Below are positions 5,225 to 32,866 of a stretch of 37,791 bases of DNA, piece after piece; the stretch's first letter is position 1; the number at the start of each line of letters is the position of its first letter. This DNA is from Vitrella brassicaformis CCMP3155 (lineage: Eukaryota; Protista; Chromerida). The position numbers and the translations under genes are program-made. The stretch is from the NCBI GenBank assembly GCA_001179505.1, contig CDMY01000638.1, positions 1 to 37,791 of the forward strand. Reading direction: 5' to 3'. The notes under the pieces are model-generated. The model ran no database searches and had not been told where the DNA came from. It saw only the letters and a program-made list of their open reading frames with translations.

Positions 5225-7957
5225 CTATGTGGCGGCACTGCGGCGCTCGACCCACAGCCCATCGGCATCGAGGCTGAGCTTGTATGGCCCGCTGTTGAGG
5301 AGGCTGATGCCCGCCTGCTGAGCCATGAAGCGCCGCTGGAAGTCGGTGCACAGGTCATCGTCCCACAAACGCACATATGCCTTCTTGTGACCCTGTCGCA
5401 GCCAAGCGGACGAATGGCGTACCCACGCTGCCTGACAGCTGTGTCGGTAGTGTGGTGTTCTATATGACTTACCTTGAGCTCGTCAGTGAAGGAGGTGATC
5501 GTGGCCATGATGTTGTCGCAGAACTTCTCAAACTGGTCATCCTGTACACCATCTAAAGCAAATCAACAAGCACCCTCACTGCCTGCTGGTTCTCCCATGC
5601 GCTCCCACCCCCTCACCAAGCACGGTGATCGTCACTTCCTCGACCGGCGGCAAGTTGCCGTTGGTGCGACGCCCCCACAGACAGGGGCTCTGGTCAGTGT
5701 GCACGGGCTCCGCGACTGCACTTGCCGACAGATACCAATACACCACCGACAGGCTCCTCTCCTTGCCCCTGCTGACCAACGCCGCCTGCAGCCGCTCGAG
5801 GAACCGCCACACCTCCCCCGCCGGGGCATCCAGCTGTAAGCCGAATTCCAGGTCTCCTATGTCGACGCACGACAGCCTCGGCATGTGCGAGGCGATCTCG
5901 ACTGCGCGTCTCACGTTGCCCTCATTGGCGAGGGCACCATCAAAGAGCAGCAGTGTGTGGGCGGCGGGGAATGTGTCGGCTGTGGCGGCCACACGATGGG
6001 TCTCGTCCCCTCCCCTGTATGTCACTGTGCCGGCTCTCTTGGCGAAGTCGCGAATGAGCTGCTGGGCGGCGGCGGGGCCGGTGCTGCTGCGCGAGAGGAG
6101 CTCCGCGTCAATCCGTCCACACCCGTTGTTGTGGAGCTTCAAGACGCCCTTCTGCACTGCCTCGGGATGGGCGATGGCGTCACTGATCGAAGGCAAAGCA
6201 CAGGAATGAATTGAGCTGTCTGCATTTCCCCGCCCCTCTCTCTCTGTTGTGTCCTTACATGAGCCGTGCAACTCTTTGCGACCGCTCCACAGTCTCATCC
6301 CACATCCACCCCATGTCGATCTCGAGCTCGCGAATGGACCGGCTGACGCCCCTCGCCACCATCACCTCACGCAGCCTGTCGATGCCCGCGAGACTGCTCT
6401 CATCCATCCAGACGCCCCGGAGTGTGCGAAGCGCCGCGAGTGACTGGCCGTCGGCGGGCAGCCCACTCAGCACACCGGCCACCTCGTCTGCGTCCAATAC
6501 GTCAGCGAGGTCGAGCACCTCAATGGCCTCACCCGCCACCCATGACCTCGCACCCTCCACTGACGGCAACCACAACCGTTGCGTGGTGAGCGACTTGACG
6601 GCAGGTGTGCGCCACTGGCGGCCCACGCGAGCCGACAGGAAGGGATTCGGGATGTTGTCGACGGTCTTGAGTGCCGGCAGGTGGACGGGGGCGGCGGGGG
6701 CGGGGGGCAGACGATACGAGGGGCGCGGGTCGGGGATGTCAACGCTGTCGTCGAGCTCGACGTGCTCGAATGCCAACACCTCCAATGTGCCCTCGTCAGG
6801 CGAGTGGCTGCCGTTGTCATCTTGCGCCATCGCCGCAGCGTCAGCTGTCCCCTGCGCTCCCTCCCTCTCTTGTCTCTTCTTCTCTGCGATGGCCTTCCGC
6901 CCGTTGGAATGACCCTCCACCAATGCCACCCACGTCCCGCGGCACCATTCGCCTCGCCACCGGGTGGGGTAGCGGTGCTTGATCTCTCGCACGTTGGTCG
7001 CCCTCTCACCCCATCTCTGGGCCACGGCCAGCGGCATGGTCTCCCACATGCGCCGCGCCGTGTCGTCCTCACAGTCGATGACCAGGTGGGTGTAGTTGGC
7101 GGCCGACTGATGGAAGAGGGGCGTGCCGAGACGCCGGCGGTGGCGCGTCAGCTCCCAGGGCTGCAGGTGGCCGAACACGTTGGCCAACTCGTCACGGGAC
7201 AGCCGACGACGGGCCTGAAGTGACAATCAACAGGACATCAAAGTAAGGTCAAGATGGTTCGATGTATCACATGTATCATGGTGTCGTCCTTACCGGTCCT
7301 TGGTTGTTGACAGGTGGAGGGTTGCCCCTTCGATGGATCAGACGATAAGACGGACCACTGGCCACAGGCGCCTGCAATGCAACAAGACAACATGACAGCA
7401 ACAACAAGGCAGAGGGCGGATCTATGCACATATGGCAATGGACGGCCACCCACTCCACCTCACCTGTGGCTCTGTGTGTGCGGCCCCCGATGCAGCAGCA
7501 GCAGCGGCGTCGGTGGTCGAGGTGGGTGCATCTACAGCTACAGCACTGGCGAGGCTGGGCTCTCTCTGCTGGAGCTTCGGGGGAAGAGTATCCAGGAGGC
7601 AGGCCACGGAGCCCAGCTGATAACTCAACGCCAACCCCACCGGCGACGATGCCTGCACCAACGAAGGACACAGTGAGCGGCTCCTCTGTGATCCAGGCCT
7701 CTCCGTCAGTGAGTGTTATCCACCTGTGCAGCGATGGTGGCGGGATCTTGGTCGAGGTGCAGCGCCAAGCTGTCCTTCACAGTACGGGCATTCGCAACAA
7801 ACTGAACGCTGAGAGAACAAAGCACGTCAAAAAGGAGAAATCGAAAGAACGGCGAAGGCGCCTTTTTCCGCCTGAGTTCTCTCCTGTATGTGTGTGTCGC
7901 CCTGTGCCCTGCCTTGTGAGCCTTCCCGCGTCGCACATTCACCTGATTGACGTCCAT
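5225..7957 (-). CDS. F-box-like/LRR-like expanded-family protein, copy A (8 exons)
   Basis: Exons splice in frame: MDVNQ (7957-7943)|FVANARTVKDSLALHLDQDPATIAAQ (7801-7724)|ASSPVGLALSYQLGSV...|APVASGPSYRLIHRRGNPPP...|ARRRLSRDELANVFGHLQPWELTRHRRRLG...|IDAIAHPEAV...|DGVQDDQFEKF...ELK|GHKKAYV...ERRSAAT* with the stop at 5225-5227. The F-box/LRR call is inferred from the L..DELANVF.HL...EL motif and repeated LxxLxxL/IxxLxI segments. Confidence 0.8.
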
Positions 7958-8524: not shown

Positions 8525-9883
8525 TCTCTTGTCTCTTCTTCTCTGCGATGGCCTTCCGCCCGTTGGAATGACCCTCCACCAATGCCACCCACGTCCCGCG
8601 GCACCATTCGCCTCGCCACCGGGTGGGGTAGCGGTGCTTGATCTCTCGCACGTTGGTCGCCCTCTCACCCCATCTCTGGGCCACGGCCAGCGGCATGGTC
8701 TCCCACATGCGCCGCGCCGTGTCGTCCTCACAGTCGATGACCAGGTGGGTGTAGTTGGCGGCCGACTGATGGAAGAGGGGCGTGCCGAGACGCCGGCGGT
8801 GGCGCGTCAGCTCCCAGGGCTGCAGGTGGCCGAACACGTTGGCCAACTCGTCACGGGACAGCCGACGACGGGCCTGAAGTGACAATCAACAGGACATCAA
8901 AGTAAGGTCAAGATGGTTCGATGTATCACATGTATCATGGTGTCGTCCTTACCGGTCCTTGGTTGTTGACAGGTGGAGGGTTGCCCCTTCGATGGATCAG
9001 ACGATAAGACGGACCACTGGCCACAGGCGCCTGCAATGCAACAAGACAACATGACAGCAACAACAAGGCAGAGGGCGGATCTATGCACATATGGCAATGG
9101 ACGGCCACCCACTCCACCTCACCTGTGGCTCTGTGTGTGCGGCCCCCGATGCAGCAGCAGCAGCGGCGTCGGTGGTCGAGGTGGGTGCATCTACAGCTAC
9201 AGCACTGGCGAGGCTGGGCTCTCTCTGCTGGAGCTTCGGGGGAAGAGTATCCAGGAGGCAGGCCACGGAGCCCAGCTGATAACTCAACGCCAACCCCACC
9301 GGCGACGATGCCTGCACCAACGAAGGACACAGTGAGCGGCTCCTCTGTGATCCAGGCCTCTCCGTCAGTGAGTGTTATCCACCTGTGCAGCGATGGTGGC
9401 GGGATCTTGGTCGAGGTGCAGCGCCAAGCTGTCCTTCACAGTACGGGCATTCGCAACAAACTGAACGCTGAGAGAACAAAGCACGTCAAAAAGGAGAAAT
9501 CGAAAGAACGGCGAAGGCGCCTTTTTCCGCCTGAGTTCTCTCCTGTATGTGTGTGTCGCCCTGTGCCCTGCCTTGTGAGCCTTCCCGCGTCGCACATTCA
9601 CCTGATTGACGTCCATCAGATGTGCTGGATGTGGAGAACCAGCCACAAAGCTATCAGACAGCAAAGGCGGCAGCAATCAAACCCCTGCAATGAGAATGCA
9701 TCCCAACTCGCAAATGGGAAGTTACACGCCGGTGGGTTAGTGTCCTGTTCTCGCGATGATTTGAACAGCATGTAGAACCATCGCGAGAACAGTGCAACAC
9801 CTTCCATCCATGCAAACATGCAACACCCGTATCCACCGGCCGGCCGAGAGACAATCAGACAAACATGCAATGACATCCAACGT
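8525..9883. repeat. Exact 1359-bp direct duplicate of 6866-8224, including exons 1-5' of copy A (ATG at 9616); likely false duplication
   Basis: Constant offset of 1659, identical ORF translations in both copies, and both copies end exactly at the gap edges. Confidence 0.9.
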
Positions 9884-10465
9884 TGTGAGTGACAGGATCC
9901 AGTGAGATATCAGGAGACAGACAAGGCAAGCCATGCAAACAGGAGGCAGCCAGCAAGCGAGAAAAGAACACTTCACCCACCCAGGCAGGCAGTAGGATCT
10001 GTCCTCACTGACGCACACATCCATTCCACTGCAGACGCCCACGCACACCAACCGGCGTGGATGAGTGAATGGGCGAGGAACGTCTCTCTACCCATCCATA
10101 AGCAGCTGCCACCGCCCGGCCCGCCCATGACAGCACAGGTGGACCGACGGGGCCGTGGGTGTGTCCTTACTGTTTGTCTGTCTGTGTGTCCCCTGTCTGC
10201 CAATCTCCGGGGTGAATGTCAACCATCCGATGCCCAATTGAAACGAAACAAGAGGGTCTCACGTTCCCTCACAGAGACACGAACCCACACACATTGAAGG
10301 TCTCCAGGCATCAACAGACTTAGCTCGATCAAGCAGAAAAAGTCGTCGTCGGACCAAGCAATAAAATCACATGGTACAACCTACTCATACACTGACTCAT
10401 CGATCCCGTCACCCGTCCACACACACGAACTGGATGGGCGGGCTGTGTGGTGTGAGAGATAGAGC

Positions 10466-10544
10466 CAGGCAGCTCGCTATTCATCGGGCTGGGCCGCTCC
10501 CTCCAAGGGTTGCGCAGCCGTCAGCCGTCACTCGCGGCCCCCTG
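10466..10544 (-). promoter_or_regulatory. Eukaryotic SECIS element (type II, GUGA variant) in the 3' UTR of the deiodinase-like gene
   Basis: Minus strand reads CAGG-G-GGC-CGC GA GUGAC GGCUG-AC-GGCUGC GC AA CCCU-UGG-AGGG A GCGGCC-CAGCC CGAU GAAUA GCG-A-GCU-G-CCUG. It shows the UGAC/CGAU non-Watson-Crick quartet, an 11-bp helix II, unpaired AA, an apical mini-stem and a 10-bp helix I. It lies about 215 nt after the stop codon of a gene with an in-frame UGA. Confidence 0.88.
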
Positions 10545-10747
10545 TCACTAATTCACACGCACATGGCAGCAGACGTCACATAGCATGTTATCTATGTGTG
10601 TGTGTGTGAGTGGATGGGGTGTTGGGACGTCGAGGTCAGATACAGAGATGCAGCAAGGGCGCAGCGATTGCATACATTTCCACTGGCCTAAACTCATTCA
10701 TTAGAAACGTACAAAAGCATGTGCGGCCAGCAGCAGCTATGGCCTGT

Positions 10748-11119
10748 CTATGCGGTGATAACATTCTTCCGTAGGAATGCATTGATCTCCATCGACTCGT
10801 ACAGAATGCCGCCGTCGGGCAGACCCAAAGCAGGCACCTGACTCACACAGACACACACACACACGCACACACACCATCCATCGGCCTTGCACATGTGAGT
10901 GTAACAGCACAGCACCTCCTACCTGTGTGAGTCCGCCCCTCTGTTTGAGTTGGTCCTTCTGCGACGGGTCGCCCTTGACGTCCACCAGCGGCAACATGCC
11001 CTGCAGCCCCAAAGCAGTCAGCTGGTCCAGCACATGGACGCAGAAGGGACACTGGGGCATGTAGAAGAGGCAGTAGCCCTCCTTCGACAGATCCTGCACA
11101 CACGCAGCCCACACAATCA

Positions 11120-11153
<34 letters not shown>

Positions 11154-12579
11154 TGTCATCCCATTGCCCACCGTGGCCTTGACACGTTTCATGTTTTCGA
11201 CAAGCGGTGCGGGCGGCGCGTCCTTGCGAGAGGCCTTGACCTCGCTGATATAGTCGCGGCCCGTCTGCTTGCCCATCCACTGCAGCACGGCGTCAAACGA
11301 GTAGTCGAATGGACCAGGCCCACCTGCACCAACGACGCACACACCGCACACAGACCCATTCCCCCTCATAAGTGTGTTTGTTTCCTCGATCTCTGGCCGA
11401 CCGATGAATGCCAGAGTGCCATCGGGTTTGAGGACCATGAGGCGGTCGGGCCAGGCGGCGTAGGCCACGCAGGCCTCGTCGTCCATGCCGTCGATGAGCA
11501 GCTCGCCAGTGACGCCCTTGCCGGCGAAGAAGTCCACCGCCAGCTTGGTCCGCTCGGCGAGGCTCGTTGTCTGCTTGACCTTCAGATTCCCATACACCGC
11601 CCACTCATCAGTCGGGTGGGCCTCCTGTGGCCACACACACACACAGACATGGAGAGATGGCCGCAGTCGTCACCCACAACCTCTGCTGGTGCGTGTGGTG
11701 TGTGCTGTTGAGTTACCCTCATGTAGATGGTGACGAACTTGGCGTCGTCCTTGAGCAGCTGTTGGGCGACCATCAGGTCGTCCATAACAGCCGCAAACTG
11801 ACATGCCAATCAATCAAGACATACAAACAGGGGGAGAAAGGGGCCACTCTCGAGCAAACCGAGGAGGGAGGCGGATCGGTCTCCTCTCTCTCGTGGCACT
11901 TACCGGGGGTCAGCTGCAGCTGCCGAAGTTGAGCACCAGGAACTTGGTGGCGTCGAGGAAGTCGTAGATGTAACGCCTCTCACCCTCAGTCGTGTACACC
12001 ACACAGTTGGGCGCCTTGCGGCCCTCTCTCAGGGTCCAGCGGCCACGTCTGCACACACAACACACACACAGCGTCTCCCTCCCTCCCTCTCTTCCTCGGC
12101 CCCGCGCCCACCTGTGAAGGCGCACATAGATCCAGATGCGGTGGTAGAAGGCGGGATTGGTCAGCGTGTGCCACATGGTCTCGCTGAGGTCATGTCGCAG
12201 CGGGTTGGGCTTCTCGGCGCCCAGCTCTCCGACGCCTTGTCGGTTGGTCATCGGGCCGGGCAGCCCGGTGACCTTGACGCCCAGCTCTCGCGAAGTGGGA
12301 GCATCCGGCTTTGTCGAAGCAGGAGCCTCCTTCCAGCCGAGCAGTCCCTTGATGAAACCCATAACGCACTTGAGAATGTAGCCCTGACAGCAGACAGACA
12401 AGGCACACACACCAACAAGCATGCATCTCATCCTCCCAATGGCATGCTGCTCATCAGCTCAGAGACGTCGCCGACGGACTGACCTGTGTCAAGAATCCGA
12501 CCATAATGGCAAACCTGATGACGTCCAGTGGCAGGTACGCCACCTCCCACAGCTGCTCTGACACCGACGAGGCCCTCAT
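10748..12579 (-). CDS. Iodothyronine deiodinase-like selenoprotein fused to a C-terminal glutaredoxin-like (CPFC) domain, 409 aa, Sec169
   Basis: Exons 12579-12484, 12383-12112, 12048-11904, 11797-11717, 11624-11402, 11323-11172, 11093-10923 and 10837-10748 (1230 nt, all GT-AG, phases consistent). Deiodinase motifs: G..APN, LVLNFGSCS(TGA 11912-11910)PPF, IYMREAHPTDEW, LIDGMDD...AYAAWPDRL, GGPGPFDY. There is an N-terminal hydrophobic anchor. Grx/GST-N motifs: CPFC (11051-11040), TQVP, LYES. Confidence 0.9.
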
Positions 12580-12786
12580 CTTGTGTGGAGGAAGAGATCA
12601 GCACAGCAGTCGACGACCTACACCATGCAGACCGCCGACCACCAGATCCAGGCGCTTGCCGACACCTCTCCGATGCCGCTGGCTAGCGAAAGAATGGATG
12701 AATTGGGAAAGTCCTTCTCTTGGAGCTGAGCTCGCAAACCCCCAAGCTCGCAGCCCGCTCTCCGATTTTCGACGGAAAGGCCAGCG

Positions 12787-13961
12787 ATGATAGCGGCGAT
12801 TGAGGTGCTGTCAGCTCACACGCTGCGGATCGGCGCCATTCTCGAGCTGATCTCCGTGATCTTTGCCCACACCCTGTTCGTCTCCGGATGCCTTTCCCCT
12901 ATCTATGACGTGTATGCGGCGTCCATGACGGGCCAGCCCGTCGATGACTACGATGCCAAGATGAAGGCCGCCGTTGCAGCCGCCCGCAAATGGAGTCTGC
13001 CCTCCCTCTATGGGCAGGTGCCGTGGATGACGGGCGCCCTGTTCATTCTCGGCTTCCAGGTGAGCATTCCACTGCAGACAGAGCGGAGGTGAGCTGTGTG
13101 TGTGTGTGTGTCGCGTCAACAGGTGAAGCTCACTGCAGACCCCTGGCTGTCCTCTCGGCATCGTCTGTTTCGGCTGGGAATCGGAGTGCTGCAGATCGGT
13201 GCCTTCCTGGACGTCACCTGGAACCTCGTCAGTCTCGCCGAGTGGTCAGCTTGAGGGCGTCCCAGATCCCATCGAGGGTGGCACGTGTATGCGTGTGTCT
13301 GTGTGTGTGTGCAGGGTGATTGCCGTCAACTATGTGAAGGCCTCCGACGCGACCGTTACCGCCCTCATTGAAGGAGGGTTCTTCTGGTGGCCTGAGATGC
13401 TCTTCGAGTGTTTCTTCTCGCTGCAGGCACTGGTGAGTGAGCGCGAGTGACGGTGTGGTGCCCGTACGTGTGTGTCGCGCGTAGTTGTATGGTGTGGCTT
13501 TCATGCTGCTGGATGTGCATCATCCGGAGGGCGGCAGCACCTGCCTGGCCTGGACCCTCCTCGTCTCGTGGACACTCACAGGCACCACCGGTACACACAC
13601 ACACAAACAGGCACACACAGGGACACACAGAAACGGTGCACATGGATGTGTGCGTTTGCATTCAGCCTTTCTCCGTCTGCTGGTGCCCCCCTCGTTTGCA
13701 CCGCTGAGCGTTGTGGTGCCCCTGGACACGCTGCAGCCCTTCTCTCTCATCCTATCTCTCACCCTCACTGTCGTCTGGTCTTTCTTATTCGAGCCGGCCG
13801 TCAACAGAGGCATGGACGCTGAGGCTGGTGGTGCTGATGAGTATGGTGGCCAGAGCATACCCAGCCATCCAGTGTGGCAATCGGCTGGTGTGAGTTACGG
13901 CCCTCTGAATGCTGCTGCTGCCCCGCCACACGCATACGAGATGGGTCAGGCGTATAAGTAA
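12787..13961 (+). CDS. Multipass membrane protein of unknown function (5 exons, roughly 6-7 hydrophobic segments)
   Basis: In-frame splicing: MIAAIEVLSAHTLRIGAILELISVIFAHTLFV...ALFILGFQ|VKLTADPW...IGVLQIGAFLDVTWNLVSLAEW|VIAVNY...FFWWPEMLFECFFSLQAL|LYGVAFMLL...LAWTLLVSWTLTGTTA|FLRLLVPP...FSLILSLTLTVVWSFLF...QAYK*. The start codon is uncertain. Confidence 0.7.
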
Positions 13962-15856: not shown

Positions 15857-17548
15857 ATGGTGGATAAAGTCCCGCTGATCAGGGTGTCTGGGAGCTCGTG
15901 GAGGGACCTAGGGCGGCAACACGGGGCGGCTCTTAAGGACCGGATCCACGCAAGCGCCTCGTTCTATTTGGGCTTTTTCCAGGACAAGTGGCACTTCACT
16001 GAGGACGAAATCGAGGAGCAGTGCCGCGGCTACGCAGAGGCCATCCGGTCATTCAACGGCGATTACACAGAGGAGATCGAGGGAATCGCAGAGGCGGCCC
16101 AGCTGCCCGCATGGAAGGTCAATCAGAGCGCACATACGACTCACGGGGATGACCTCTACACGCTAAGTTTTGCTTCTGTTGGATGCCTGCAGGTGTATGC
16201 CCTGAATTGCAGGACAGAGCTCCTCAACTGGAAGAAGAGCGTCACCGAAGCGGCAGCACCACAAGCACGTCCTGAGGATCCAGTCGACGTCGACAGCTCC
16301 TCGTCTGTTGTGGGGGGAGAGTGCACTGCTCTGTGCAATGCTAGTGCGGGGCTGCTGGCACAGAACTGGTATGTGCCCGTCTAGCATACGCATACAAACG
16401 CCGCTGCATACGTACGCGTGCACGTGGGCTGTGGTGCACAGGGATTGGGACGTACGCTTGGAGGATCTGGTGGTGGTCCTGCTGATGGACAAACCTGACG
16501 GCTCACAAATCATGATGCTCACCGAGCCCGGCGTGATTGGAAAGGTGCGTCTGCACACGAACAGGCGAACGGCACATGGGAAAGACGGCAAGATGACCGC
16601 GTGTGTCTGACTTGTCATGCGTGTGGTTCAGATAGGCATGAACAGCGCTGGCGTTGGCGTCACACTACAGCTGCTGCATTGCCCCTGTCCGCGAGCGCCC
16701 CCCGGCACCACCGTGGCTGCTCGTCAGCCGACAGAGGACAGCCACGGCATTCCTATTCACATTCTGCTGAGGACAGTGCTGGACTCGCACTCGGCCACTG
16801 AGGCCTTCACCAAGCTCAGGGGTCTGCCGCAGGGCAAGAGAAACACAGCCAGCTGCATTATCATGGCCGACAAAGGAGGCAACTGCCACACGCTCGAGTT
16901 CGCCAGAGGAGGTGAGTCATGCCATCACCAGCACACTGCGAAGCCATTCACAGTGTCCCAATGACATTTCCTGTGTGTCAGCGATGGACGACATCAAGTG
17001 TCTTCCCGCAACGGACAAGCGCGCCTGCCGCCCCTTCCCCCACTGCACCCCCATCCACACAAACCACTACCTGGGCTGCGGGCTGGAGTGCCAAACGACG
17101 GGGAGCGAGACATCGTATGCGAGGTTCGACACGATGGAGAGGCTTCTGCAGGAGCTGAGCGGCCCGCCGATGCTTGAGGACATCAAGCGGGTGCTGGCGG
17201 ACCGGTCAAATGCAGAGTTGCCCATCCAAAGGCCGTACAAACATGACAAGTAAGTATTTCAGCACCGATGGCGCATTTGGGTGGTTTATGGATATAGACC
17301 TGCTGTGTGTCTTGGTCGGTTGCCGTGTGTGCAGGAAATACGGCCTGATGGGAGGCACAGTGGCCACAGTCATCCTGGAGCTGCAGAAAGGCGTCTTCCA
17401 TGTCACGCGAGGTAGGTCTGTGTGTCGAGGAAAGAGGCTCTTGGCCACGTCTCACTTTTCGTGCATCTGCATTGTGTGTGTGGATGTGGGTGCAGGGAAT
17501 CCCTATGAGCATCCGCTCGAGGCAATTTCGGCGCCGTGGGCGGCATGA
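15857..17548 (+). CDS. Peptidase C45 / acyl-CoA:6-aminopenicillanic-acid acyltransferase-like Ntn hydrolase (7 exons)
   Basis: Family motifs: G..HG...K..I, EEIEGIAEAA, ALNCRTEL, the GE/CT autoprocessing site (Cys codon 16322-16324), AQNWDW, TEPG.IGKIGMNSAGVGV, GIPIHILLRTVL, HTNHYL, S..RF, TVATVILEL. All six introns are GT-AG and in phase. Confidence 0.88.
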
Positions 17549-17994
17549 GAATACATTAATTGTGGATACGCATATTTTTGTAGTACCAGTGGGATGCGTG
17601 TGAAGCCATGTGTGTGGGACCGGTGATTGGCAGACCATTGTGATGATCGTGAGAATCAATATGCACGATAAGATCCATTGCATGCCACGTAGATTGTCCT
17701 AAGGCCGGACGTCCACGCATGAACGTGCACGTGCACATTGAAATCCGTCTCCCATCCACACTCCATTCGCACAACCCATGCATCATTCAATGGTCAGCCA
17801 CTATGAAATCGTCGTGTGTCATGGATACGCAGCAGCATAATGTGGGCTCTAAGAAGCACCCACCTCTCGGCCATCACAAAAGCACATATTCAGCCATCGC
17901 TGGCTTAGGGGTTTGACGGGCAACATGTCCCTAAGGCGCCCCCAAAACCAAACCATGGGTTCCTTGGACATGGCGTAGGTGGCGCAACTCGCAC

Positions 17995-32058: not shown

Positions 32059-32866
32059 CAGCATAGCTGGACCGAGGGGGCAGGGCCCCTCGGTCCAGCT
32101 ATGCTGTCATGGGCGGGCCGGGCGGTGGCAGCTGCTTATGGATGGGTAGAGAGACGTTCCTCCCTCATTCATTCATCCATCCACGCTGGTTGGTGTGCGT
32201 GGGCAACTGCAGTGGAATGGATGTGTGCGTCAGTGCGGATCGGTCCCACTGCCTGCCTGCCTGGGTGGGTGGGTGAAGTGTTCTTTTCTCGCTTGCTGGC
32301 TCCCTCCTGTCTGCATGGCTTTTGCGTTGTCTGTCTCATGGTATCTCAGCGGCGGCTGTCACGCACCAGTGTCGGGTGTCATTGTGTGACTATCTGGTGA
32401 CCGGTTGGATACGGGTGCTGCATTCCTACATGATGAACACTGGCTGAATTCATGAGCCCTGACGTGTTCACACACACACACACACACACAAAGTCGACAA
32501 TTGGACACTAACCCACCACCGTATAACTTCCCATTTGCTGAGGAGAATGGCGTGTGCGAGGATTTAGACTCATTCCGATTCATCGCAGGGAGTGATTGCT
32601 GCCGCTTTTGCTGTCTGATAGCTTTGTGGCTGGTTCCCCACCACCAGCACGCCTGATGGACGTCAATCAGGTGAATGTGCGGACGCGGGAGGGCTCACAA
32701 GGGCTCACAAGACAGAGGATGACAGACGAGCACAGCAGAGAGAATGCAGGCAGAGAAAGCCGCCTTTGCCATGCTTTCGACCACTCTGATCTGCTGTTCT
32801 GGCATGGTTGCAGGGGGTCTCTTACGGTTCGTCGCGGCTTGTTCTTAGCAGCATAAGAGCGGCGCC

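What the first reader, a model, noticed from the sequence alone, without database searches (positions are those of the whole stretch)
10466..11912. Hidden UGA recoding: in-frame TGA at the catalytic position plus a canonical SECIS
The ORF track stops at ...NFGSCS*, but TGA (11912-11910) is followed by CCC CCG|gtaag, and the next exon continues with F, giving U-P-P-F exactly as in Sec deiodinases. About 215 nt after the real stop there is a hairpin with a GUGAC/CGAU quartet, 11-bp helix II, AA, an apical mini-stem (type II) and a 10-bp helix I. GUGA rather than AUGA is the variant often seen in protists. Automated annotation would probably truncate, split or mis-splice this gene. It also implies working Sec machinery in this organism.
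Basis: partly seen in the sequence, partly recalled or inferred. Interest (0 to 1): 0.8.

Follow-up and report, generated by a model that had tools for sequence, protein, structure and literature searches.

The report
Hidden selenocysteine in deiodinase-glutaredoxin gene
A gene of the alga Vitrella brassicaformis for a relative of animal thyroid-hormone deiodinases, joined to a glutaredoxin domain, carries a UGA "stop" that almost certainly encodes selenocysteine; the public annotation splices the active site out, but selenoproteins of this kind are already known in protists.

Summary
TGA 11912-11910 (minus strand) lies in frame in exon 3 of an 8-exon gene. Five independently assembled transcript contigs keep it, and the reading frame continues behind it for 240 codons. 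The codon falls exactly on the catalytic Sec of mouse Dio3 (4TR3). The public model CEM27681.1 uses another donor and deletes 33 nt (VLNFGSCS-U-PP), which removes the active site.

The 3' UTR holds one SECIS-like hairpin (10544-10466), 216 nt after the TAG stop and inside the mRNA. It has a GUGA/GA core, an 11-bp helix II, AA, a mini-stem and a 10-bp helix I. It is good but not canonical:
- helix II has a 2-nt bulge;
- the K position of the core is C;
- no Rfam SECIS model matches it;
- the three genomic copies show no compensatory changes.

The genome encodes tRNA-Sec, SepSecS and SelD. A candidate eEFSec was found; PSTK was not.

The protein is a deiodinase-like selenoprotein of about 409 aa with a C-terminal CPFC glutaredoxin domain. 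Among the 150 best HMMER hits, this fusion appeared only in Vitrella paralogues.

The recoding itself is an ordinary new case. The scan had already noted this stretch and its paralogues elsewhere in the genome.

The parts
12484..12708 (-). Exon 1: 5' UTR plus start of the CDS (ATG 12579-12577). Encodes the hydrophobic N-terminal stretch.
   Evidence: 100% match to transcript L031 with GT-AG intron borders. Kyte-Doolittle 19-residue window reaches 1.69 at residues 13-45.
12112..12383 (-). Exon 2. The deiodinase-domain match begins at about 12188.
   Evidence: PF00837 profile positions 44-112 in P0002.
11904..12048 (-). Exon 3, ending ...NFGSCS-TGA-PP. The real donor follows 11904. The public model instead uses the GT at 11936-11935.
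11910..11912 (-). In-frame TGA, read as selenocysteine (catalytic position).
   Evidence: Kept in 5 transcript contigs. Falls on residue 57 of 4TR3, the Sec170 position. TGA at the same site in the paralogues on C386, C768 and C255.
11717..11797 (-). Exon 4 (FAAVMDD...IYMR).
11402..11624 (-). Exon 5 (EAHPTDEW...), second half of the deiodinase fold.
   Evidence: PF00837 E = 1.1e-08 for this exon alone.
11172..11323 (-). Exon 6: end of the deiodinase domain (about 11268) and the linker.
10923..11093 (-). Exon 7: first part of the glutaredoxin / GST-N domain. CPFC codons at 11051-11040.
   Evidence: PF00462 30.6 bits, PF13409 32.5 bits, PF13417 29.1 bits; all above their cut-offs.
10126..10837 (-). 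Exon 8: end of the glutaredoxin domain, TAG stop at 10750-10748, and a 3' UTR of at least 622 nt.
   Evidence: L031 matches at 100% down to 10126.
10466..10544 (-). SECIS-like type II hairpin. Core GUGAC 10531-10527 and CGAU 10486-10483, AA at 10511-10510.

Best explanation
This is a nuclear gene of Vitrella brassicaformis. It encodes a deiodinase-family selenoprotein of about 409 residues (about 45.7 kDa) that is probably anchored in a membrane.

The UGA at 11912-11910 is read as selenocysteine in the motif C-S-U-P-P-F. Recoding is most likely directed by the GUGA-type, type II SECIS hairpin in the 3' UTR, about 940 nt downstream in the mRNA, using the organism's tRNA-Sec, SepSecS, SelD and eEFSec machinery.

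Shown here:
- the mRNA keeps the UGA and contains the hairpin;
- the frame continues into the conserved second half of the fold;
- the UGA sits at the family's catalytic Sec/Cys position;
- core Sec machinery genes exist in the genome.

Inferred: the Sec attacks a substrate that is still unknown (a halogenated aromatic compound or a peroxide). [quoted passage not shown] The fused C-terminal CPFC glutaredoxin domain, working with glutathione, reduces that bond again. This would make the enzyme self-recycling, by analogy with peroxiredoxin-glutaredoxin hybrids.
For: Gene model: it reproduces transcript L031 base for base over 1981 nt, with GT-AG introns.

Transcripts: five contigs from JGI/MMETSP and Logan show ORF1 (168 aa, ending NFGSCS), then TGA, then ORF2 in the same frame.

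Pfam: PF00837 matches both sides of the TGA at abutting profile positions. PF00462, PF13409 and PF13417 match at the C-terminus, all above their cut-offs.

Solved structure: 4TR3 aligns to both sides and leaves residue 57 for the TGA.

Paralogues:
- The C768 paralogue (P0006) is 40% identical to the post-TGA part (E = 4.8e-38). It has the same TGA and the same glutaredoxin fusion.
- The C386 paralogue keeps the TGA. dN/dS against it is 0.25 upstream and 0.43 downstream of the TGA, and the exons have no indels.

SECIS:
- It is the only candidate in the UTR.
- The hairpin sequence occurs only three times in the 72.7-Mb genome, all in the 3' regions of this gene pair.
- 97% of cells pair, and the core and AA never vary.
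- Copy C386b differs from the window copy at roughly 27% of unpaired columns against 10% of paired columns (my own count on the alignment).
- GUGA_AA SECIS elements are documented in green algae and sponges (PMC3473315, PMC2375036).

Machinery:
- tRNA-Sec at 71.6 bits, confirmed by ARAGORN with anticodon TCA.
- SepSecS in six exon matches.
- SelD in four exon matches.
- A GTPase exon whose best match is selB.

Recycling chemistry: the DIO1 Cys124-Sec126 selenenyl-sulfide is reduced by GSH (PMC9141512).
Against: - There is no direct evidence of selenium incorporation.
- No Rfam SECIS model matches the hairpin.
- Helix II has a 2-nt bulge and its 5' strand is longer than in published patterns.
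- The base before the 3' GA is C, not G or U.
- The fold energy is no better than shuffled sequence (z = -0.63).
- The three copies show no compensatory double changes. The window and C386a copies lie within an 87%-identical segmental duplication, so their similarity says little on its own.
- PSTK was not found. SBP2 was not searched. The eEFSec call is narrow (selB 106.6 bits against eIF2-gamma 96.3 bits).
- The downstream dN/dS rests on only 22 differences.
- The substrate and the role of the glutaredoxin domain are inference only.
Confidence: 0.87

Rival explanations
1. The TGA is a true stop. The transcript would then yield only a 168-residue N-terminal fragment, or the gene is decaying, and the downstream frame is not translated.
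For: By default UGA is a stop, and gene callers split the transcript into two ORFs. There is no protein-level evidence.
Against: - The downstream frame stays open for 240 codons and encodes the indispensable second half of the deiodinase fold plus a glutaredoxin domain.
- The same arrangement is kept in a paralogue only 40% identical.
- The TGA sits exactly at the family's Sec/Cys position.
- Sec machinery and a SECIS-like hairpin are present.
Confidence: 0.04
2. The public gene model is right: the alternative donor at 11937|11936 is used. The protein is then a 398-residue Sec-less protein lacking VLNFGSCS-U-PP.
For: A GT dinucleotide exists at 11936-11935, and the frame is kept after removing 33 nt.
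Against: - All five assembled transcripts use the donor after 11904 and keep the TGA.
- The deletion would remove the family's catalytic motif.
- The same 'fix' appears in the model of the paralogue (P0004), which is typical of gene predictors avoiding an in-frame stop.
- A minor isoform cannot be excluded from assembled contigs.
Confidence: 0.04
3. The UGA is recoded as Sec, but the hairpin at 10544-10466 is not the working SECIS. The real element would be elsewhere, or the hairpin is a structure that merely travelled along in a recent duplication.
For: - No Rfam match.
- Non-consensus K position, bulged and long helix II, and energy like shuffled sequence.
- No covariation.
- The surrounding duplication is 87% identical anyway.
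Against: - No other candidate exists in about 950 nt after the stop, even with relaxed rules.
- The hairpin alone was duplicated a second time in the C386 UTR, and there changes concentrate in unpaired positions while the core and AA are untouched.
- Rfam SECIS_1 finds only one weak hit in this entire selenoprotein-bearing genome, so its silence says little.
- SECIS candidates of the other paralogues have the same type II build.
Confidence: 0.1

Closest known systems
Vertebrate iodothyronine deiodinases DIO1-3 (PF00837; mouse Dio3 catalytic domain 4TR3, human DIO2 9H48)
   Same: - Thioredoxin / peroxiredoxin-like fold family, with the active-site motif FGSC-x-U-PPF.
- A proximal Cys two residues before the Sec.
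- The EAHP-x-D-x-W motif.
- A hydrophobic N-terminus.
- UGA-encoded Sec with a 3' UTR SECIS.
   Different: - Only about 30-40% identity over the alignable parts.
- The host is a chromerid alga with no known thyroid hormone, so the substrate is unknown.
- It carries an extra C-terminal glutaredoxin domain.
- The SECIS has a GUGA core rather than AUGA.
Deiodinase-like selenoproteins of protists and bacteria, e.g. Dictyostelium discoideum DI (PMC2375036) and DIO in algal selenoproteomes (PMC7539508)
   Same: Sec-containing deiodinase homologues outside animals, with type II SECIS elements. They are usually mis-annotated because of the UGA.
   Different: - The papers read here do not describe a glutaredoxin fusion for this family.
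- Vitrella is absent from the searchable selenoprotein literature.
Peroxiredoxin-glutaredoxin hybrid proteins (bacterial AhpC-TSA + Glutaredoxin clusters seen; Haemophilus influenzae PGdx from my own knowledge)
   Same: A peroxiredoxin-like catalytic domain followed on the same chain by a dithiol glutaredoxin domain, which recycles the oxidised catalytic residue with glutathione.
   Different: - Here the catalytic domain is of the deiodinase subfamily and uses Sec.
- This is functional analogy only, not homology of the fusion event.
GUGA_AA type II SECIS elements of green algae and sponges (PMC2375036, PMC3473315)
   Same: G before the UGA/GA quartet, unpaired AA after helix II, an apical mini-stem, and a 3' UTR location.
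   Different: - Helix II carries a 2-nt bulge, giving 16 nt between UGA and AA.
- The position before the 3' GA is C in this copy (U in copy C386a).
- Rfam models do not recognise it.

Membership tests
Iodothyronine deiodinase family (Pfam PF00837) | Profile match above Pfam's gathering score. | tested here: met
   Cut-off is 27 bits. Scores: P0002 31.0 bits; post-TGA piece 68.3 bits; exon 3 alone 32.2 bits; exon 5 alone 35.1 bits.
Iodothyronine deiodinase family (Pfam PF00837) | Catalytic Sec or Cys in the motif FGS-x-x-U/C-PPF. | tested here: met
   NFGSCS aligns to NFGSCT (residues 51-56) and PPF to residues 58-60 of 4TR3. The TGA therefore takes residue 57, the Sec170 position.
Iodothyronine deiodinase family (Pfam PF00837) | Reductive dehalogenation of iodothyronines or related substrates. 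| not testable with these tools
   Needs an enzyme assay. No thyroid hormone is known in chromerids.
Iodothyronine deiodinase family (Pfam PF00837) | N-terminal single-pass membrane anchor. | tested here: inconclusive
   Hydropathy windows reach 1.62-1.69 at residues 13-45. No dedicated transmembrane predictor was available.
Eukaryotic selenoprotein gene (UGA recoded through a 3' UTR SECIS) | In-frame UGA kept in the mature mRNA, with a conserved frame continuing behind it. | tested here: met
   Five transcript contigs keep the UGA, and 240 further codons lie in frame.
Eukaryotic selenoprotein gene (UGA recoded through a 3' UTR SECIS) | SECIS anatomy: UGAN/KGAW quartet, helix II, unpaired AA, helix I, inside the 3' UTR. 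| tested here: inconclusive
   Present: UGAC...GAU, AA, an 11-bp helix II, a 10-bp helix I and a mini-stem, all inside the transcript. Deviations: K is C, there is a 2-nt bulge, and the spacing is 16 nt (consensus from PMC3753652 and PMC2375036).
Eukaryotic selenoprotein gene (UGA recoded through a 3' UTR SECIS) | Recognition by a curated SECIS covariance model (Rfam). | tested here: not met
   No SECIS hit at E <= 10 on 10200-10900, and none at gathering score. The same model finds only one weak hit (29.3 bits) in the whole genome, so it is insensitive here.
Eukaryotic selenoprotein gene (UGA recoded through a 3' UTR SECIS) | Sec machinery in the genome. | tested here: met
   - tRNA-Sec: 71.6 bits, and ARAGORN calls SeC with anticodon TCA.
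- SepSecS: found.
- SelD: four exon matches.
- eEFSec: a candidate only.
- PSTK: not found.
- SBP2: not searched.
Eukaryotic selenoprotein gene (UGA recoded through a 3' UTR SECIS) | Selenium actually incorporated at the UGA. | not testable with these tools
   Needs 75Se labelling or mass spectrometry.
Glutaredoxin / GST N-terminal domain (PF00462, PF13409, PF13417) | Profile match above cut-off and a CPxC active-site motif. | tested here: met
   PF00462 30.6 bits (cut-off 22.9), PF13409 32.5 bits (25) and PF13417 29.1 bits (22). CPFC at 11051-11040. The sequence also shows a VP (cis-Pro) and ES, read directly.
Glutaredoxin / GST N-terminal domain (PF00462, PF13409, PF13417) | Glutathione-dependent disulfide or selenenyl-sulfide reduction. 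| not testable with these tools
   Needs biochemistry.

The most novel reading that the evidence does not exclude
The deiodinase-glutaredoxin fusion may be a chromerid-specific invention. It was seen only in Vitrella paralogues (this gene, C386 and C768) among the 150 best hits of an exhaustive HMMER search. In this reading the tethered CPFC domain is the dedicated reductant of the Cys-Sec selenenyl-sulfide. If so, it would be a natural 'Rosetta stone' showing that glutathione/glutaredoxin is the physiological recycling system of deiodinase-type enzymes. That question is still open for the animal enzymes (PMC9141512).
Probability: 0.4. Interest if true: 0.55.

Novelty: new variant of a known kind. 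Interest (0 to 1): 0.4.

Why it matters
Annotation: public records CEM27681.1 and CEM08771.1 lack the catalytic motif. They should be corrected to proteins of about 409 residues containing Sec.

Biology: this adds to the evidence that Vitrella, a free-living relative of apicomplexan parasites, keeps a working selenocysteine system and a small family of deiodinase-like selenoproteins. The searchable literature does not describe a Vitrella selenoproteome.

Mechanism: the in-chain glutaredoxin domain, together with the C-x-U motif, gives a testable hint about how deiodinase-type enzymes are re-reduced. This point is unsettled for the human enzymes.

The recoding itself follows the textbook mechanism and would not surprise a selenoprotein specialist.

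Tried and rejected
- Rfam. Scans of the UTR at E <= 10, and of the window plus paralogue loci at gathering score, gave no SECIS hit. A genome-wide SECIS_1 search gave one weak hit. Rfam is therefore uninformative for this organism.
- Organism-specific covariance model. I planned to build one from independent Vitrella SECIS elements. The GPx (C296) and Rdx (C104) loci gave no SECIS candidate in my scan. SelK and Sep15/SelM profiles found nothing. MAFFT could not align the three independent candidates (C768, C255, C249) in structural register.
- Word-index protein search with the intron-containing ORF. It found only the gene's own cluster.
- Exon versus intron divergence against the C386 paralogue. 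The duplication is too recent to be decisive: several introns are 94-99% identical outside microsatellites.
- An alternative register of the SECIS core, CUGAC at 10524. It lacks a matching 3' GA next to its helix, so I rejected it.
- A glutaredoxin domain in the C255 paralogue. Only an 8-residue chance-level match was found.
- Joined searches. The pieces were searched apart, by reference (window exons, natural transcript pieces, P0002/P0003). Exons were concatenated in a script only to test equality with the natural transcript L031.
Full report
**What is in the sequence.** On the minus strand, ORF 11910..12431 ends ...NFGSCS followed by TGA at 11912-11910. After the TGA come CCC CCG and a GTAAGT donor.

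**Organism and public model.** The word-index search returned one cluster. Its representative, P0001, is CEM27681.1 of Vitrella brassicaformis CCMP3155, on a 37,791-base contig, which is this window. The assembly has 72.7 Mb in 1064 contigs. P0001 (398 aa) reads ...DATKFL|FAAVMDD.... The model therefore uses a GT at 11936-11935 and drops 33 nt encoding VLNFGSCS-U-PP. The model of the paralogue, P0004 (CEM08771.1), has the same deletion.

**Transcript evidence.** The same protein cluster holds MMETSP transcript ORFs of 168 aa (P0002, ending NFGSCS) and 234 aa (P0003, starting MDDLMV...). Five transcript contigs, L031-L035, come from two JGI/MMETSP samples and two Logan runs. Each carries both ORFs in the same frame, 18 nt apart. 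L031 reads ...tgc agc tga ccc ccg ttt gcg....

I rebuilt eight exons with GT-AG introns:
- 12708-12484
- 12383-12112
- 12048-11904
- 11797-11717
- 11624-11402
- 11323-11172
- 11093-10923
- 10837 to at least 10126

Together they reproduce the first 1981 nt of L031 exactly. The exons were concatenated only inside that script, to test equality with the natural transcript.

It follows that the TGA is kept in the mRNA, the annotated donor is not the one seen, and the 3' UTR runs at least 622 nt past the TAG stop (10750-10748). That is well beyond the hairpin.

**Family and position of the TGA.** PF00837 (T4_deiodinase) matches the upstream piece at profile positions 44-112, ending one residue before the TGA. 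It matches the downstream piece from position 115. All scores are above the cut-off.

Against solved structures, NFGSCS aligns to residues 51-56 and PPF to residues 58-60 of mouse Dio3 (4TR3). Residue 57, the catalytic Sec170 position, is left for the TGA. Bacterial homologues have Cys there (FGSLTC).

In the exhaustive HMMER search, most hits are proteins of 110-140 residues that start just after this position. That is what gene callers produce when they cut a selenoprotein at its UGA.

The genome holds three more deiodinase-like loci (C386, C255, C768). C386 and C255 show a TGA at the equivalent site. For C768 the TGA was seen in its transcript.

**Conservation behind the TGA.** The region 13862-10413 is an 87%-identical segmental duplicate of C386:46725-43136. 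The exons have no indels. dN/dS is 0.25 upstream of the TGA (9 differences) and 0.43 downstream (22 differences). This fits purifying selection, but the counts are small.

The stronger evidence is the C768 paralogue. Its post-TGA ORF, P0006, is 40% identical over 217 residues (E = 4.8e-38). Its transcript reads ...NFGSCS-TGA-GPF....

**The hairpin.** My motif-plus-fold scan looked for [A/G]UGAN, a helix II, unpaired AA and a 3' GA. It finds exactly one candidate in the roughly 950-1450 nt after the stop. The core is 10531-10483, with 11 bp, one 2-nt bulge and -20.7 kcal/mol. Only one other hairpin of comparable quality occurs in the whole window on either strand. The full fold adds a 10-bp helix I.

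The 79-nt sequence occurs three times in the genome: here, and twice in the 3' region of the C386 paralogue. On the three-copy alignment:
- 97% of cells pair.
- GUGA, the 3' GA and AA never vary.
- Three pairs change by wobble.
- No pair changes on both sides.

Copy C386b is a duplicate of the hairpin alone. By my count on the alignment, it differs from the window copy at about 27% of unpaired columns against 10% of paired columns.

The SECIS candidates of the C768 and C255 paralogues, and the single weak Rfam hit in the genome (C249), have the same type II build. GUGA_AA elements are documented for green algae and sponges (PMC2375036, PMC3473315).

**Reservations about the hairpin.**
- No Rfam SECIS model matches it, although SECIS_1 is nearly blind in this genome.
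- The published core consensus is UGAN/KGAW (PMC3753652). Here K is C.
- The 2-nt bulge puts 16 nt between UGA and AA.
- The fold energy is like that of shuffled sequence.

'Canonical' is therefore too strong. 'Well-formed GUGA-type, type II SECIS candidate' is fair.

**Sec machinery.**
- tRNA-Sec on C270: 71.6 bits (gathering score 47); ARAGORN calls SeC with anticodon TCA.
- SepSecS on C544: six exon matches covering profile positions 3-371.
- SelD on C464: four exon matches.
- A GTPase exon on C473 whose best match is selB, narrowly ahead of eIF2-gamma.
- PSTK was not found with the eukaryotic model.
- SBP2 was not searched.

**The C-terminal domain.** Residues 157-229 of P0003 match Glutaredoxin, GST_N_2 and GST_N_3 above their cut-offs, with a CPFC motif encoded at 11051-11040. 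The fusion is on one continuous ORF in the transcripts.

P0006 (C768) has the same build, with CKFC. Among the 150 best of 1375 HMMER hits in 1.84 billion representatives, the only other two-domain hits are bacterial tandem deiodinase-like proteins. No ESM Atlas cluster among those returned combined PF00837 with a glutaredoxin family, whereas bacterial AhpC-TSA + Glutaredoxin clusters did appear. The algal selenoproteome paper lists other fusions but not this one. A weaker fusion further down the hit list cannot be excluded.

**How it most likely works.** Shown: there is a UGA-containing mRNA with a SECIS-like element, in an organism that has Sec machinery.

Inferred: Sec insertion gives a protein of about 409 residues with an N-terminal hydrophobic anchor, a deiodinase-type catalytic domain and a glutaredoxin domain. 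Human DIO1 forms a selenenyl-sulfide between Sec126 and Cys124, and glutathione reduces it (PMC9141512). This protein has the same C-x-U spacing. The fused CPFC domain is therefore a plausible in-chain recycler, analogous to peroxiredoxin-glutaredoxin hybrids. The substrate is unknown.

**Novelty and earlier notes.** Deiodinase-like selenoproteins outside animals have been known since 2007 (PMC2375036), so the recoding is an ordinary new case. The glutaredoxin fusion is the variant feature.

Earlier notes of this scan had already flagged this stretch (s1-235820), the fusion on other pieces of the genome (s1-197151, s1-218421), other deiodinase-like selenoproteins (s1-239418, s1-212031), and a double SECIS that fits what I saw on C386 (s1-218445). 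I re-tested each point here. Those notes are not counted as evidence.

Noticed in passing
window 17505-17551 (+): A second SECIS-like hairpin: AUGA...AA...GA, 13 bp, -17.9 kcal/mol. It lies about 250 nt downstream of a plus-strand gene (15857-17250) whose ORFs match PF03417, the acyl-CoA:6-APA acyltransferase family. No in-frame TGA was looked for, so it may be chance.
   Followed up: partly
window 10413-13862 and L028 (G000:C386:43136-46725): A segmental duplication of 3.6 kb at 87% identity covers this gene and part of its upstream neighbour. The C386 copy carries two copies of the SECIS hairpin about 400 nt apart (43252-43203 and 42853-42804); the window copy has one.
   Followed up: partly
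window 7220-7263 and 8879-8922 (+); 26220-26168 and 29801-29762 (-): A dispersed repeat of about 44 nt or more, starting GUGACAAUCAACAGG..., turned up four times in the hairpin scan. The tail of transcript L031 (nt 1992-2380) also matches several window sites (32080-32384, 10154-9781, 8224-8122). This suggests a repeat family and a possibly chimeric end to that assembly.
   Followed up: no
window introns 12111-12049, 11401-11324, 11171-11094: Three introns are multiples of three (63, 78 and 78 nt) with no in-frame stop. A 301-aa ORF (10737-11642) therefore runs straight through two of them. ORF-based reading overstates the exon content here.
   Followed up: yes
L027 (G000:C249:99750-99800, +): The only Rfam SECIS_1 hit in the whole genome (29.3 bits, below gathering score). 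It is a clean AUGA-type hairpin with a 10-bp helix II and AAA. The gene it serves was not identified.
   Followed up: no
L033 (JGI 3300017148 transcript contig): This contig matches the window copy at 100% through exon 7, then switches to 100% identity with the C386 paralogue in the last exon. It is probably an assembly chimera, but it shows that the C386 copy is also expressed.
   Followed up: no
G000:C467 (L004, L006, L008, L039): This contig carries an intron-less EF-Tu (560 bits to TIGR00485) and several tRNA-like hits. It is probably an organellar contig.
   Followed up: no
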